From Dicyema japonicum (taxonomy: Eukaryota > Animalia > Dicyemida), in NCBI GenBank assembly GCA_011109175.1, contig RDEW01000003.1, positions 1,161,071-1,225,070 on the forward strand: 64,000 nucleotides of DNA, in the 5' to 3' direction. Below the pieces are notes generated by a model. The model had not been told where the DNA came from and searched no databases. It worked only from the letters and a program-made list of their open reading frames with translations. Made by a program: the position numbers and the translations under genes. This document shows positions 31,451-33,892 of the stretch, in pieces. Numbering within the stretch: the first letter of the stretch is position 1; each line of letters begins with the position of its first letter.

Positions 31451-32243
31451 ACTGTATTTCCTTAAAATTCTAACTTCCTCGTAATATCCCTAAATTTACT
31501 GAGATAAATTTAAAAATTAAAATTGTGACATTACTTACAATTGAACAAGCTTTTAAACAAATAATTGATGTTTCGTTACTAATTTTCCCATTTGGGGGTT
31601 TATTACTAAAAAAAATTTTATTATTACTATTAAAAATAAATCTCCCCAAATTCGAAATTTTCTAAAAAAGAGGTTTTCCCGCAGTTTGGGTTTCCTTGAA
31701 ACGAGGTCGACTTGTACTATCTTTGTAATAAAATATTTCTGGTTATGAGCATTTTTCAGCTTCATGGTCCGATTGACTTGTAGGACACAGAATTAGATTC
31801 ACCAAACTTTGCAGTTTTTTACGTACTTAATCACAAGTAATTTGTCATTGAAGCTTTGGTTACTAAAAGGCTTTCACTTCGAGGAAGTCTTGCGAATCTT
31901 GTCTGAGACCCTTAGAAAACTTTTGTCGTGCAGTCATTTTGTCCTCACTATTTACCTGGTGATGATCGCTTGCAGAGGTATGAGATTCGTGGGCAGTCCA
32001 TTTTAGACAAAATATGGGAGTCTTGGATCAATTTCATGAGTGCCAAACAACCCTTGGATCACTACACCTAAGTGAACACAATTTTAAGTAGGCACTAAGG
32101 GGATGTTGACTATGATCAGTAAAAACAGATGTACTAATCACCACAAAAATTTTATTTCGAACGCGCAATAAATTTACCTTTTTGATAAATTCGAAAACCA
32201 TGAAAATATTTAGCAAACAATTTTGATTTGAAACACAACAAAA

Positions 32244-33892
32244 TTAAATTGAAAAATCAGTCATCTCTTTATTCCATTCTCCGAGTTTCTTGTCTTTCAA
32301 AAGAGACACAAATAACTCAAATCTTCTATTATACTCCACATTGAGCTTCTTTGCTTCCAAATAACTTTCCACCACCAAGTTCTCTCGACTTTTCAAAGTT
32401 TGTTTAAACAGCCTAGCCATCTCTGCAGTGGTTAATAGAGGATGCAAAGCCTAATGTTAGGACTAATGACTTACTTGGGTGTCAAAATGGGGTTTTTCTT
32501 CTCCCAGAAACCAAGACATTTTATGGTTAGAGATAGAATCGGTGTTCCTCGAATCACGTGCACTTCCCAAACAGAGGATCGTCGGTTTTTTTGGTCCGAA
32601 TTCTACGAGGCGTCCGTAAAAGGCGTTCTCGAAAAGTTCCTGAGGGGCTAAGTACGACTGTTCTGATTTTAAACGAAATAGCCTACTAATAAGAATGGAA
32701 GACATGAAAATGGGCTCTACAAAGTTCCCCAGGAGGTTTCCCTGAATGCCTAGGCAATTCCACTTTAAAATTTTATCGGAGGAACTCATTTGTGACTTAT
32801 TAACAGCGTCCGTCATAGAAATGGTACCCTCACCTGGAGGTCACTGAGACTATTACCTTGTACATTAATTCTTCTCAGTTCAGAAAAACGTGTTGTATAA
32901 GGAATTAGTTCTAGCATTGATCGACCTAACTTACTAAGACTTATCTATTAACATTACATTTCAAACAAACAGGCACAGCCAGATGGAGGGCTACTTAAAA
33001 ATAAATGAAAAAGCCCGCCTAATTTAAATTTCACACGGGTCGTTGTGGTCGCTAGTTGATTGTACACAAATCTATTTCTATCATAAACTACCTTAGAAAT
33101 GCTCGTCTCGCTAGATATTCCGCTCTCATTCCCATCCCAGCAGCAATAACTTGGAAATCTCCATCCAATTCCTGGACGATGAGAGCAAAGTTTTTCCGTC
33201 CAGCGGTAAATTCGGGGTACGTCTTTTGAATTCCCAGTATAAAGGCCTGACAGACATCATCCACGGAAAGATCGCTACTACTGTCCGTCTCTTCCTGTAA
33301 TTCTGGTTTTCCGTGATAATTGCTCAGCACAGAAGAAACCGCCTTCTCAGCCGCATTTCGTTTCGCATTCTTGGCGTTGTTCCCGTTAGCCTCCATGATT
33401 GGTTTTCCGTCGAGAAAAATAACGGCTTTGTAACTGATTGTAAAATTATAGAAACTTGGATCTGGTTAACTTTTCGACCTTCCACGTGCACATTATCCCA
33501 TTTTTTTGAGAGTAGTTTGTCACAAAGGACACTGGATTGCGAGAAAGGTACTCATTAGATTTATCACAGTCTAGTAAATTGAATAGATCATGTCATACTT
33601 AACTTGGTTGCTGAATTTGAATAGAAATCGGTTATTTTTTCAATGGCATTCTGCGCACACACATACTTGGCGGATTTTTTTGTTGAAGAATATGCAGTAG
33701 AAATTTCGTCGTTAATTTTGCATGAATACCCATATTTGGTATTTTGTTTGCTCAGTTCTTCAAATGATACTAAATATTGCAAAGACAATTACTGGATATT
33801 CCTCTTTTCGAGCAATACTCATACAGTGAACTTATCGGGTTTACTAATTTGTTTAACATTAATATACCACAGCATTTATCAACGGGTTCCAT
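32244..33892 (-). CDS. ADAR/ADAD-like protein: two dsRNA-binding motifs plus an adenosine-deaminase-fold domain lacking zinc ligands, 9 exons, 486 aa
   Basis: Eight GT-AG introns (24, 23, 28, 22, 20, 24, 23, 24 nt) give a 1461-nt open frame. dsRBM1 NPISSLYEY...[13 protein letters not shown], dsRBM2 NPVSFVTNY...[13 protein letters not shown]. Deaminase motifs [59 protein letters not shown]. Confidence 0.9.

What the first reader, a model, noticed from the sequence alone, without database searches (positions are those of the whole stretch)
32244..33892. Intact ADAR-like gene with all three zinc ligands replaced but RNA-binding and IP6-pocket features kept
The frame is fully open (486 aa). The catalytic motifs read RAE instead of HAE (33118-33126), PSG instead of PCG (32978-32986) and MSSSDK instead of MSCSDK (32772-32789). 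About 17 residues between the GxG and HAE motifs are missing, with no intron to hide them. The Glu, the GEG base-flipping loop, ARR, SDK..KW, Y..AK.....Y and GxW are retained; these correspond to inositol-hexakisphosphate pocket positions in ADAR2. This points to a folded pseudo-deaminase acting as a dsRNA-binding scaffold or editing regulator. Inactive relatives are known (vertebrate ADAD proteins, C. elegans ADR-1). Whether this is an ADAD orthologue or an independent inactivation, perhaps of the only ADAR in a transposon-rich reduced genome, is open.
Basis: partly seen in the sequence, partly recalled or inferred. Interest (0 to 1): 0.74.

Follow-up and report, generated by a model that had tools for sequence, protein, structure and literature searches.

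The report
Catalytically dead ADAR gene in Dicyema
This is a real, intact gene of the tiny cephalopod parasite Dicyema japonicum. It encodes an RNA-editing-enzyme look-alike that has lost its zinc catalytic site, sits beside one normal editing enzyme in the genome, and belongs to a known kind of protein.

Summary
The motif observation holds at the exact coordinates: RAE 33118-33126, PSG 32978-32986, MSSSDK 32772-32789. The frame is not open as it stands. The minus-strand gene needs seven GT..AG mini-introns of 20-28 nt, giving about 494 aa: two dsRBDs plus an ADAR-type deaminase domain.

The genome matches Dicyema japonicum (67.5 Mb, 377 scaffolds). DNA contigs from three runs of one sample show no change at the ligand codons. 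All seven clean coding variants are synonymous (p about 6e-4), so the gene is under purifying selection and is not a pseudogene.

An 18-residue hairpin before the His site and about 12 residues holding the TWDG dimerisation helix are deleted. Glu396, R400/R401, GEGT, R481 and most IP6 ligands remain.

It is not the only ADAR. A second locus (scaffold C212) encodes a 536-aa ADAR2-type protein with HAE, PCG, SCSDK and TWDG intact.

Origin is unresolved. Maximum likelihood favours a sister relation to the active Dicyema gene, but long branches are involved and an ADAD grouping is not rejected (AU p 0.52). Mollusc ADAD-like sequences could not be obtained.

Expression is untested, and the spliced model was not folded.

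Verdict: a new member of the known class of dead ADAR paralogues, of moderate interest.

The parts
32244..33892 (-). Whole coding region of the dead ADAR-family gene (ATG 33892-33890, TAA 32246-32244). It has 8 exons and 7 mini-introns and encodes a 494-aa model.
   Evidence: Three-frame reading and intron search. Spliced model built in a script from the window.
33793..33892 (-). Exon 1: N-terminus and start of dsRBD1.
33770..33792 (-). Intron 1, 23 nt, GT..AG, phase 1. The active paralogue has an intron at the same alignment position and phase.
33599..33769 (-). Exon 2: rest of dsRBD1, with a canonical KKSAK motif at 33680-33666.
   Evidence: Pfam dsrm 2.8e-4 on this exon; motif coordinates.
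33571..33598 (-). Intron 2, 28 nt, GT..AG, phase 1.
33456..33570 (-). Exon 3: linker and first half of dsRBD2.
33434..33455 (-). Intron 3, 22 nt, GT..AG, phase 2. An alternative 37-nt donor further upstream is also in frame. Position and phase are shared with the active paralogue.
33092..33433 (-). Exon 4: second half of dsRBD2 (AKNAK at 33375-33361), an acidic/Ser linker and the start of the deaminase domain. It includes GMG-M-RAE (33138-33118) and the RR pair equivalent to R400/R401 (33108-33103).
   Evidence: Pfam dsrm 6.6e-4; alignments; coordinates.
33118..33138 (-). Site of the 18-residue hairpin deletion. GMG is followed by Met, then Arg-Ala-Glu. The His394 ligand is absent, and the Arg is the equivalent of either H394 or K376. 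Glu396 is kept.
   Evidence: contiguous DNA.
33072..33091 (-). Intron 4, 20 nt, GT..AG, phase 2. Position and phase are shared with the active paralogue.
32958..33071 (-). Exon 5: holds PSG (32986-32978), i.e. Cys451 changed to Ser, with G452 and F457 kept.
32934..32957 (-). Intron 5, 24 nt, GT..AG, phase 2. It is specific to this gene, and an insertion polymorphism lies at 32951/32952.
32857..32933 (-). [quoted passage not shown]
32834..32856 (-). Intron 6, 23 nt, GT..AG, phase 1, splitting the first Gly codon of GEG. Position and phase are shared with the active paralogue. SNPs lie at 32844 and 32854.
32475..32833 (-). Exon 7: the GEGT base-flipping loop (32857/32833-32823), then a shortened segment lacking TWDG (32822-32790), then [10 protein letters not shown] (32789-32760), where Cys516 is Ser, K519 is kept, R522 is Lys and W523 is kept.
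   Evidence: Pfam A_deamin 1.5e-15; PDB ADAR2 5.5e-9.
32451..32474 (-). Intron 7, 24 nt, GT..AG, phase 0, with an in-frame stop. It is specific to this gene.
32244..32450 (-). Exon 8: C-terminal helices of the deaminase domain, with the IP6 ligands Y658, K662 and Y668 (32363-32331) and W687 (GEW 32282-32274), followed by the stop codon.
   Evidence: Pfam A_deamin 9.7e-4.

Best explanation
This is a functional, selectively maintained gene of Dicyema japonicum. It encodes a non-catalytic member of the ADAR family: two dsRNA-binding domains followed by an ADAR-type deaminase domain.

Shown:
- The zinc site is destroyed. The His ligand is lost together with an 18-residue hairpin, or replaced by Arg. 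Both Cys ligands are Ser.
- The TWDG dimerisation helix is deleted.
- The domain still keeps the residues that hold the fold and its inositol-hexakisphosphate core (R400, R401, K519, W523, Y658, K662, Y668, W687).
- It also keeps the catalytic Glu, the G-E-G-T base-flipping loop, R481 and a canonical KKxAK in dsRBD1.
- The same genome has exactly one other ADAR locus, an ADAR2-type gene with all catalytic motifs.

Inferred mechanism:
- The protein binds double-stranded RNA but cannot deaminate.
- It acts on the editing system of the active ADAR, either as a competitor for substrates or as a dedicated non-catalytic partner.
- My preferred version is the partner. In the asymmetric ADAR2 dimer the auxiliary monomer uses G452, F457, R481, residue 488, G489, T490 and R590 to receive the TWDG helix of the catalytic monomer.
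- The dead protein keeps those residues and has lost TWDG, E485 and E693.
- The active Dicyema ADAR keeps TWDG, E485 and an acidic 693, but has lost F457, R590 and R455.

Origin:
- It is most likely an old duplicate of the dicyemid ADAR2-type gene that was inactivated independently.
- Orthology to the lophotrochozoan ADAD-like lineage is not excluded.
For: Gene structure and family:
- Seven canonical GT..AG mini-introns give one 494-codon frame. Introns are tiny in this genome (mean 38 bp, 6.2 per gene; PMC6736024).
- Pfam dsrm matches on two exons and A_deamin on three. The best PDB matches are ADAR2.

Sequence reliability:
- No sequence difference appears at the ligand codons in DNA contigs of three runs.

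Selection:
- 7 of 7 coding variants are synonymous, against 34% expected for transitions (p = 5.6e-4).
- There are 4 variants in 164 bp of intron.
- The branch is very long (3.2-4.9 changes per site) yet the frame is open.

Residues and partners:
- Residue mapping to human ADAR2, using ligand lists from PMC10278661 and dimer contacts from PMC11334849.
- A second, active ADAR locus, and only that one.

Sister relation to the active gene:
- Quick tree, SH-aLRT 96.
- The constrained tree is 5.5 lnL better than the free search.
- 96/95 support without ADAT1.
- 4-5 shared intron positions with the same phase.
- The 7-mer GNLLGNF is found in neither of the other 350 fetched family members.
Against: - Expression is untested. 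No RNA run held the stretch, and the laid contigs are colinear DNA without joints. The splice sites are therefore inferred.
- No structure was predicted, because the spliced protein has no reference. 'Folded' rests on conserved residues and on selection.
- Two deletions next to the active site and three IP6 ligands not kept at the aligned column (K629T, K672F, K690E) could mean an altered or IP6-free fold.
- The partner hypothesis rests on alignment columns, some in variable regions (R590, E693). R455 of the acceptor pocket is Cys.
- The sister relation may be long-branch attraction. The tool flags 'long branches meet'.
- With the active gene left out, the dead one sits between the ADAD1+ADR-1 group and the active ADARs.
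- With ADAT1 included, the free search put it at the root.
- Pairwise, the active paralogue is only about the 19th best hit.
Confidence: 0.7

Rival explanations
1. The gene is the dicyemid orthologue of the ancient bilaterian/lophotrochozoan ADAD-like lineage (mollusc ADAD, squid sqADAR/D-like). It would then have been inactivated long before dicyemids arose, not by an independent event. Its function would be that of those proteins: dsRNA binding, and inhibition or modulation of ADAR2.
For: - ADAD-like genes are reported as mostly single-copy across lophotrochozoan phyla (PMC6651903) and as old as bilaterians (PMC9989829).
- Squid sqADAR/D-like has two dsRBMs, C451S, R522K and most IP6 ligands. 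It inhibits sqADAR2 in vitro (PMC10278661).
- A tree with the dead gene held with ADAD1 is not rejected (AU p 0.52) and is only about 4 lnL below the tree with the active gene as sister.
- With the active gene removed, the dead gene attaches next to the ADAD1+ADR-1 group.
- Its dsRBD2 scores best against ADAR1-type dsRBDs, as reported for squid dsRBM2.
Against: - The ADAD1 profile scores 44 bits, against 85-89 for the ADAR2, ADAR1 and ADR-1 profiles.
- The GEGT loop, R481 and Glu396 are kept here but lost in ADAD1. The squid protein has E396A and keeps His.
- R522K and S531N are shared with the active Dicyema gene, so they do not point to ADAD.
- The signature GNLLGNF is unique to the two Dicyema genes.
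- ML and bootstrap favour the active gene as sister.
- No lophotrochozoan ADAD-like sequence was in the tree, so this rival was never tested directly.
Confidence: 0.33
2. The gene is a decaying pseudogene. It would be a duplicate of the active ADAR that lost its catalytic site and is drifting, with the open frame kept by chance.
For: All three zinc ligands are lost, there are two deletions in the catalytic core, the branch is very long, and no RNA evidence was obtained.
Against: - A frame of 494 codons across eight exons is intact, with seven canonical splice sites, despite about 70% divergence from every relative.
- 7 of 7 segregating coding variants are synonymous (p = 5.6e-4), while introns carry roughly five times the variant density.
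- Fold-critical and IP6 residues are conserved.
Confidence: 0.05
3. The His/Cys replacements are assembly or sequencing errors in an otherwise active ADAR.
For: Each Ser codon (TCT, TCC) is one base from a Cys codon.
Against: - Short-read contigs from three runs cover all three sites with no difference. They come from the same sample as the assembly may have, so they are not fully independent.
- The Arg codon AGA is at least two changes from His.
- The 18- and 12-residue deletions cannot be base-call errors.
- The surrounding variants look like normal alleles.
Confidence: 0.02

Closest known systems
Squid sqADAR/D-like and the mollusc 'ADAD-like' proteins (PMC10278661; PMC6651903; PMC9989829)
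   Same: Both have two dsRBMs plus an inactive deaminase domain, carry C451S and R522K, and keep most direct IP6 ligands. Both coexist with active ADARs in a spiralian. The squid protein is shown to be inactive and to inhibit ADAR2 in vitro, which is the kind of role proposed here.
   Different: The squid protein keeps His394 and has E396A and C516A. Its residue numbering shows no shortening between the two Cys positions. The Dicyema protein lacks His, keeps Glu396 and GEGT, has C516S, and has two deletions (the 377-394 hairpin and the TWDG helix).
Caenorhabditis elegans ADR-1 and nematode ADR-1-like proteins (here P0003, P0101, P0097, P0279)
   Same: Both have two dsRBDs plus a dead deaminase domain with MSSSDK and a Ser or Asn in place of C451. 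Both lack TWDG and sit beside one active ADAR. From general knowledge, ADR-1 binds ADR-2 and its substrates and modulates editing.
   Different: The nematode proteins keep the hairpin, have Tyr or Asp at the His position and have lost the GEG loop and R481. The profile score is equal to that of the ADAR2 profile, and no tree grouped them with the Dicyema gene.
Vertebrate ADAD1 (TENR) and ADAD2
   Same: These are inactive A_deamin proteins with a dsRBD, MSSSDK or MSASDK at the second Cys, and IP6 ligands kept.
   Different: They have one dsRBD, HAV (His kept, Glu lost) and PKG, and lack the GEG loop and R481. The profile score is half that of the ADAR profiles. They are testis-specific, which has no counterpart in an animal of about 30 cells.
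Vertebrate ADAR3 (ADARB2)
   Same: It has two dsRBDs plus a deaminase domain, has no detected activity, and is reported to inhibit ADAR2 (as cited in PMC10278661).
   Different: ADAR3 keeps all zinc ligands, Glu and the IP6 ligands (Table 1 of PMC10278661) and has an R-domain. It is a vertebrate-specific ADAR2 duplicate.
Human ADAR2 (ADARB1; PDB 1zy7, 5hp2, 6vff) and the active Dicyema ADAR (L001)
   Same: They share the domain order, the same fold family (A_deamin), the IP6-pocket core, the GEGT loop and R481. The dead gene shares 4-5 intron positions with the Dicyema gene.
   Different: Both are active-type: H394, C451, C516 and the TWDG helix are present. Identity to the dead protein is about 30%.

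Membership tests
ADAR family in the broad sense (dsRBD + A_deamin, PF00035 + PF02137) | Adenosine-deaminase (editase) domain detectable by profile | tested here: met
   Exon 7 scores 1.5e-15 (58 bits, cut-off 27), with exons 8 and 5 weaker. The six-frame genome search gives 3e-20 at this locus.
ADAR family in the broad sense (dsRBD + A_deamin, PF00035 + PF02137) | One or more dsRNA-binding domains N-terminal to the deaminase domain | tested here: met
   There are two dsrm matches, each split by an intron (E 2.8e-4 and 6.6e-4). Each exon alone is just under the 23-bit cut-off, and it reaches 23.3 bits with its neighbours in the genome search. KKSAK and AKNAK motifs are present.
Catalytically active ADAR (ADAR1/ADAR2 type) | Zinc ligands His394, Cys451 and Cys516 (human ADAR2 numbering) | tested here: not met
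   They are Arg or deleted, Ser and Ser. DNA contigs agree.
Catalytically active ADAR (ADAR1/ADAR2 type) | Proton-shuttle Glu396 and the G-E-G base-flipping loop | tested here: met
   E234 and G307-E308-G309-T310 of the model align with these residues.
Catalytically active ADAR (ADAR1/ADAR2 type) | TWDG dimerisation helix | tested here: not met
   The columns for T501-V505 are gaps. Eleven residues stand between GEGT and MSSSDK where ADAR2 has 23.
Catalytically active ADAR (ADAR1/ADAR2 type) | Deamination of adenosine in dsRNA | not testable with these tools
   This needs an enzyme assay.
IP6-containing A_deamin fold (ADAR/ADAT1) | The 12 direct IP6 ligands listed for human ADAR2 (PMC10278661, Table 1) | tested here: inconclusive
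   R400, R401, K519, Y658, K662, Y668 and W687 are identical. R522 is Lys and S531 is Asn, both as in the active paralogue. K629 is Thr, K672 is Phe (Arg-Arg adjacent) and K690 is Glu (Lys adjacent). IP6 binding itself was not tested.
Vertebrate-type ADAD (ADAD1/ADAD2) | Single dsRBD plus inactive deaminase domain | tested here: not met
   There are two dsRBDs here. ADAD1 proteins carry one dsrm (and the literature).
Vertebrate-type ADAD (ADAD1/ADAD2) | Phylogenetic grouping with ADAD | tested here: inconclusive
   No free tree grouped them. The constrained grouping is not rejected (AU p 0.52). The ADAD1 profile gives 44 bits against 89 for ADAR2.
Lophotrochozoan ADAD-like / squid ADAR/D-like | Orthology by sequence | not tested
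   The capped searches returned no such sequence. Sequences printed in papers were not typed in. Only published residue tables were compared: C451S and R522K are shared, while the states at H394, E396 and C516 differ.
Nematode ADR-1 | Phylogenetic grouping with ADR-1-like proteins | tested here: inconclusive
   The profile score of 89 bits equals that of ADAR2. No tree grouped them. With the active gene removed, the gene attaches beside the ADAD1+ADR-1 group with weak support.
ADAT1 (Tad1) | A_deamin domain without a dsRBD, active zinc site, long insert before the second Cys | tested here: not met
   The protein has two dsRBDs, no zinc ligands and no insert. The root-side placement is weak (67/82) and is beaten by the constrained trees.

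The most novel reading that the evidence does not exclude
The asymmetric ADAR homodimer has been split between two genes in dicyemids. The active ADAR2-type protein keeps the donor elements (TWDG helix, E485, acidic 693) and catalysis. This dead paralogue, inactivated independently of ADAD, ADR-1 and ADAR3, keeps only the acceptor surface (G452, F457, R481, GEGT, R590) and its dsRBDs. It would then serve as an obligate auxiliary monomer that chooses or tunes substrates in a genome that is half repeats and has only about 5,000 genes.
Probability: 0.2. Interest if true: 0.65.

Novelty: new member of a known kind. Interest (0 to 1): 0.38.

Why it matters
Dead ADAR paralogues that regulate editing have been described in vertebrates (ADAD1/2, ADAR3), nematodes (ADR-1) and cephalopods (ADAR/D-like). 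Finding one under purifying selection in a dicyemid suggests that the pair 'one active ADAR plus one dead partner' is hard to lose, because this animal has about 30 cells and has shed most of its gene set.

The pattern of what this copy kept and lost is unusual. It kept the flipping loop, R481, Glu and the IP6 core. It lost the zinc site, a hairpin and the TWDG helix. That pattern gives a concrete, testable idea of what such partners need: the auxiliary-monomer surface and the dsRBDs, not catalysis.

If the inactivation proves independent, it adds another convergent case. If the gene proves an ADAD-like orthologue, it extends that lineage to the most reduced spiralians. It also shows that D. 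japonicum has the machinery for A-to-I editing.

Tried and rejected
- Single open frame: rejected. There are stops in all frames.
- Fewest-intron solution of an automatic search: rejected. It removed conserved dsRBD and linker residues. The homology-guided introns were kept.
The laid contigs showed no joints. Expression and junctions stay untested.
- Close orthologues: the exhaustive representative search with exon 7 gave no relative above 34-48% identity and no self hit.
- Word searches seeded with a rodent ADAD1 and a nematode ADR-1-like protein returned vertebrate ADAD1, nematode and ADAR2 proteins, but no mollusc ADAD-like protein. The third word search was not spent, because no suitable seed was in hand.
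- Tracing the dead-type exon-size ORFs P0063, P0051 and P0033 to their contigs gave unnamed metagenome or Logan contigs. This line was dropped.
- dsRBD-level comparison was too weak to classify (7-17 bits).
- Third A_deamin locus: L004 (E 0.69) is a chance match.
- The scan's earlier notes had nothing on ADARs in this genome.
- Left out on the operators' rule: the joined 494-aa model has no reference, so it was never sent to any search, structure or complex tool. It was assembled only inside scripts from the window file and used there for local alignment, profile scoring and trees. No structure prediction, fold search or complex prediction was therefore run. Exon-size pieces were judged meaningless to fold.
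- Sequences printed in papers' supplements (squid ADAR/D-like, oyster ADAD) were not typed in.
Full report
**What is in the sequence**

The region 32244-33892 has stop codons in all three minus-strand frames, so it is not one open frame. Reading the DNA shows short GT..AG segments exactly where the frame shifts.

Removing seven of them gives a single frame of 494 codons from ATG 33892 to TAA 32244. The seven are:

| Intron | Coordinates | Length (nt) |
|---|---|---|
| 1 | 33792-33770 | 23 |
| 2 | 33598-33571 | 28 |
| 3 | 33455-33434 | 22 |
| 4 | 33091-33072 | 20 |
| 5 | 32957-32934 | 24 |
| 6 | 32856-32834 | 23 |
| 7 | 32474-32451 | 24 |

- An automatic fewest-intron search found other paths, but they cut out conserved residues.
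- The third intron has an in-frame 37-nt alternative.
- The window belongs to an assembly of 67,542,437 bases in 377 pieces. That matches the published Dicyema japonicum genome: 67.5 Mb, 377 scaffolds, 36.7% GC, 6.2 introns per gene, mean intron 38 bp (PMC6736024).

**Check of the observation**

- By Pfam, exon 7 is A_deamin (1.5e-15). Exons 8 and 5 match it weakly, and exons 2 and 4 carry the second halves of two dsRBDs.
- Against solved structures the best matches are human ADAR2, with MSSSDK aligned on MSCSDK.
- GMG and RAE are separated by one codon of contiguous DNA. The hairpin present in every other family member is therefore deleted in the genome. It is 19 residues between GTG and HAE in ADAR2 and in the active Dicyema gene, so 18 residues are missing here.
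- In the best alignment the Arg falls on K376 rather than H394. The His may have been lost with the hairpin rather than replaced.
- A second deletion of about 12 residues between GEGT and MSSSDK removes the TWDG helix.

**Is the sequence right, and is the gene alive?**

- The one run search returned four runs of one sample that hold the stretch, plus a trace in another organism's run. None is on record as RNA.
- Laid on the window, three of them (X1-X3) and the other organism's run (X5) give colinear DNA contigs without joints. No difference appears at any ligand codon.
- They probably come from the sample that was assembled, so they exclude assembly slips, not strain differences.
- They do differ from the window at allelic sites (the genome has 1.24% heterozygosity). 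Seven coding sites differ, all of them synonymous third-position transitions.
- In 164 bp of intron there are two SNPs and two insertions.
- Only 34% of possible transitions in this frame are synonymous. Seven of seven therefore has p = 5.6e-4.
- One further nonsynonymous and one synonymous change sit on a divergent contig that runs off at 32310. They may belong to another copy.
- The frame and seven splice sites are intact on a branch of 3-5 changes per site. Together with the polymorphism, this argues strongly for a protein under purifying selection.

**What is kept and what is lost**

I mapped the protein onto human ADAR2 (P0291).

*Lost:*
- H394
- C451 (Ser)
- C516 (Ser)
- the 377-394 hairpin
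- TWDG (501-504)
- E485
- R510
- K594
- R455 (Cys)

*Kept:*
- E396
- G452 and F457
- R481
- G487-E488-G489-T490
- R590 (in a variable region)
- KKSAK in dsRBD1

*Direct IP6 ligands (list in PMC10278661):*

| State | Residues |
|---|---|
| Identical | R400, R401, K519, Y658, K662, Y668, W687 |
| Changed as in the active paralogue | R522 to Lys, S531 to Asn |
| Not kept at the aligned column | K629 (Thr), K672 (Phe), K690 (Glu); a basic residue is adjacent to the last two |

Vertebrate ADAD1 and nematode ADR-1-like proteins have lost the GEG loop and R481. Keeping them is a distinctive trait of this protein.

**It is not the only ADAR**

- A six-frame search of the whole assembly with PF02137 finds this locus, one strong second locus on scaffold C212 (1.5e-47, whole profile) and one chance match.
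- A search with exon 7 finds the same two loci.
- The second gene (L001:736-2481, six introns of 22-23 nt) gives a 536-aa model with two dsRBDs, HAE, PCG, MSCSDK, GEGT and QTWDG.
- It falls in the ADAR2 group (87/90) and scores 249 bits on an ADAR2 profile against 223 on ADAR1.
- No ADAT1-like locus was seen.

**Origin**

Literature:
- ADAD-like genes are reported across lophotrochozoans (PMC6651903) and are dated to early bilaterians or earlier (PMC9989829).
- Squid has an inactive 'ADAR/D-like' with two dsRBMs, C451S, C516A, E396A and R522K that inhibits ADAR2 (PMC10278661).

Searches:
- The exhaustive search with exon 7 found 494 relatives, but none close and none above 48% identity.
- I obtained ADAR2, ADAR1, vertebrate ADAD1, nematode ADR-1-like and ADAT1 sequences. 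I obtained no mollusc ADAD-like protein.

Trees of the deaminase domain:
- Quick tree: the dead gene pairs with the active gene, SH-aLRT 96.
- Careful tree with ADAT1: the dead gene sits at the root (67/82). The tree with the two Dicyema genes held together is 5.5 lnL better, and the one with ADAD1 is 1.6 lnL better (AU p 0.52).
- Careful tree without ADAT1: the dead gene pairs with the active gene at 96/95, with a long-branch warning.
- With the active gene removed: the dead gene attaches between the ADAD1+ADR-1 group and the active ADARs.

Profile scores for the dead domain:

| Profile | Bits |
|---|---|
| ADAR2 | 89 |
| ADR-1 | 89 |
| ADAR1 | 85 |
| ADAT1 | 72 |
| ADAD1 | 44 |

Other characters:
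- Four introns share the same alignment column and phase, and a fifth lies within three columns.
- S531N and R522K are shared by the two Dicyema genes.
- The 7-mer GNLLGNF in the most conserved block occurs in both Dicyema genes and in none of the 350 other fetched proteins.
- Pairwise, however, the active gene is only a middling hit for the dead one. Any duplication is therefore old.

I put about 50% on an old dicyemid-lineage duplicate, about a third on an ADAD-like orthologue, and the rest on neither.

**Mechanism**

Without zinc ligands the domain cannot activate water, so loss of deaminase activity is a safe inference. Two dsRBDs, one with canonical KKxAK, together with the kept flipping loop and R481, point to continued engagement of dsRNA.

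The ADAR2 structural review describes an asymmetric dimer (PMC11334849):
- The TWDG helix of the catalytic monomer docks on G452, F457, R455, R481, residue 488, G489 and T490 of the auxiliary monomer.
- R481 and R590 of the auxiliary monomer form salt bridges to E693 and E485 of the catalytic monomer.

The two Dicyema proteins are complementary on these positions:
- The dead one keeps the acceptor set (except R455) and lacks TWDG, E485 and E693.
- The active one keeps TWDG, E485 and an acidic 693, and has changed F457, R590 and R455.

I therefore propose that the dead protein is a non-catalytic partner of the active ADAR, bringing dsRBDs and an acceptor surface. Simple competition for substrates, as shown for squid ADAR/D-like and reported for ADAR3, is the alternative. 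Both are inference, and nothing here tests binding.

**Limits**

- The spliced model has no reference. It was joined only inside scripts for local alignments, profile scores and trees.
- No structure was predicted.
- Expression is untested.
- The key comparison set (lophotrochozoan ADAD-like proteins, other dicyemids) is missing.

**Verdict**

This is a real gene and a real loss of the catalytic site, but it belongs to a known kind of protein and sits beside a normal ADAR. The kept-and-lost pattern and the setting in an extremely reduced animal give it moderate interest.

Noticed in passing
L001:736-2481 (= G000:C212, about 120804-122549, + strand): This is the active-type ADAR of the same genome. 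It has 7 exons and six introns of 22-23 nt, and gives a 536-aa model with two dsRBDs, HAE, PCG, MSCSDK, GEGT and QTWDG. It falls in the ADAR2 group. At positions that the auxiliary monomer uses in the human ADAR2 dimer it has Leu for F457, Thr for R590 and Ser for R455.
   Followed up: partly
whole assembly G000; L004:1100-2100: The six-frame search with PF02137 finds only two real A_deamin loci. The third hit (E 0.69) is chance. No ADAT1 (Tad1) homologue was seen in this genome, which may be a loss or a miss of the exon-by-exon search.
   Followed up: partly
window 32200-32310: A divergent contig (X1 record 3, 3217 nt; X3 record 18, 864 nt) matches the gene's last 65 coding bases and 3' flank with 6-7 differences, including M489I. 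It then runs on into unrelated sequence at 32310. It may be a second partial copy or a structural allele.
   Followed up: no
window 32680-32928: A run labelled as another organism (X5, organism B) holds a 249-nt contig at depth 2 with only two differences. This is a trace of the same or a very close dicyemid in that sample, perhaps a host sample.
   Followed up: no
window 33434-33470: The third intron has two in-frame donors, giving introns of 22 nt or 37 nt. The longer one would remove five residues (KLTRS) from dsRBD2. Only RNA data can tell which is used.
   Followed up: no
L007:10001-10252, L006:102-452, L005:678-1088: Exon-size ORFs of dead-type A_deamin domains (MSTSDK or MSSSDK in place of MSCSDK) occur in unnamed metagenome and Logan contigs (P0033, P0051, P0063). 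They are probably ADAD- or ADR-1-like genes of unidentified animals.
   Followed up: partly
trees (no window coordinates): Vertebrate ADAD1 and nematode ADR-1-like domains group together (SH-aLRT 94; 92/51). This could be attraction between fast-evolving dead domains rather than common descent.
   Followed up: no
P0001 (moth protein, 1286 aa): The top hit of the exhaustive search has four separate stretches matching the conserved MSCSDK block, i.e. a repeated partial A_deamin segment. This may be a gene-model artefact or a tandem duplication.
   Followed up: no
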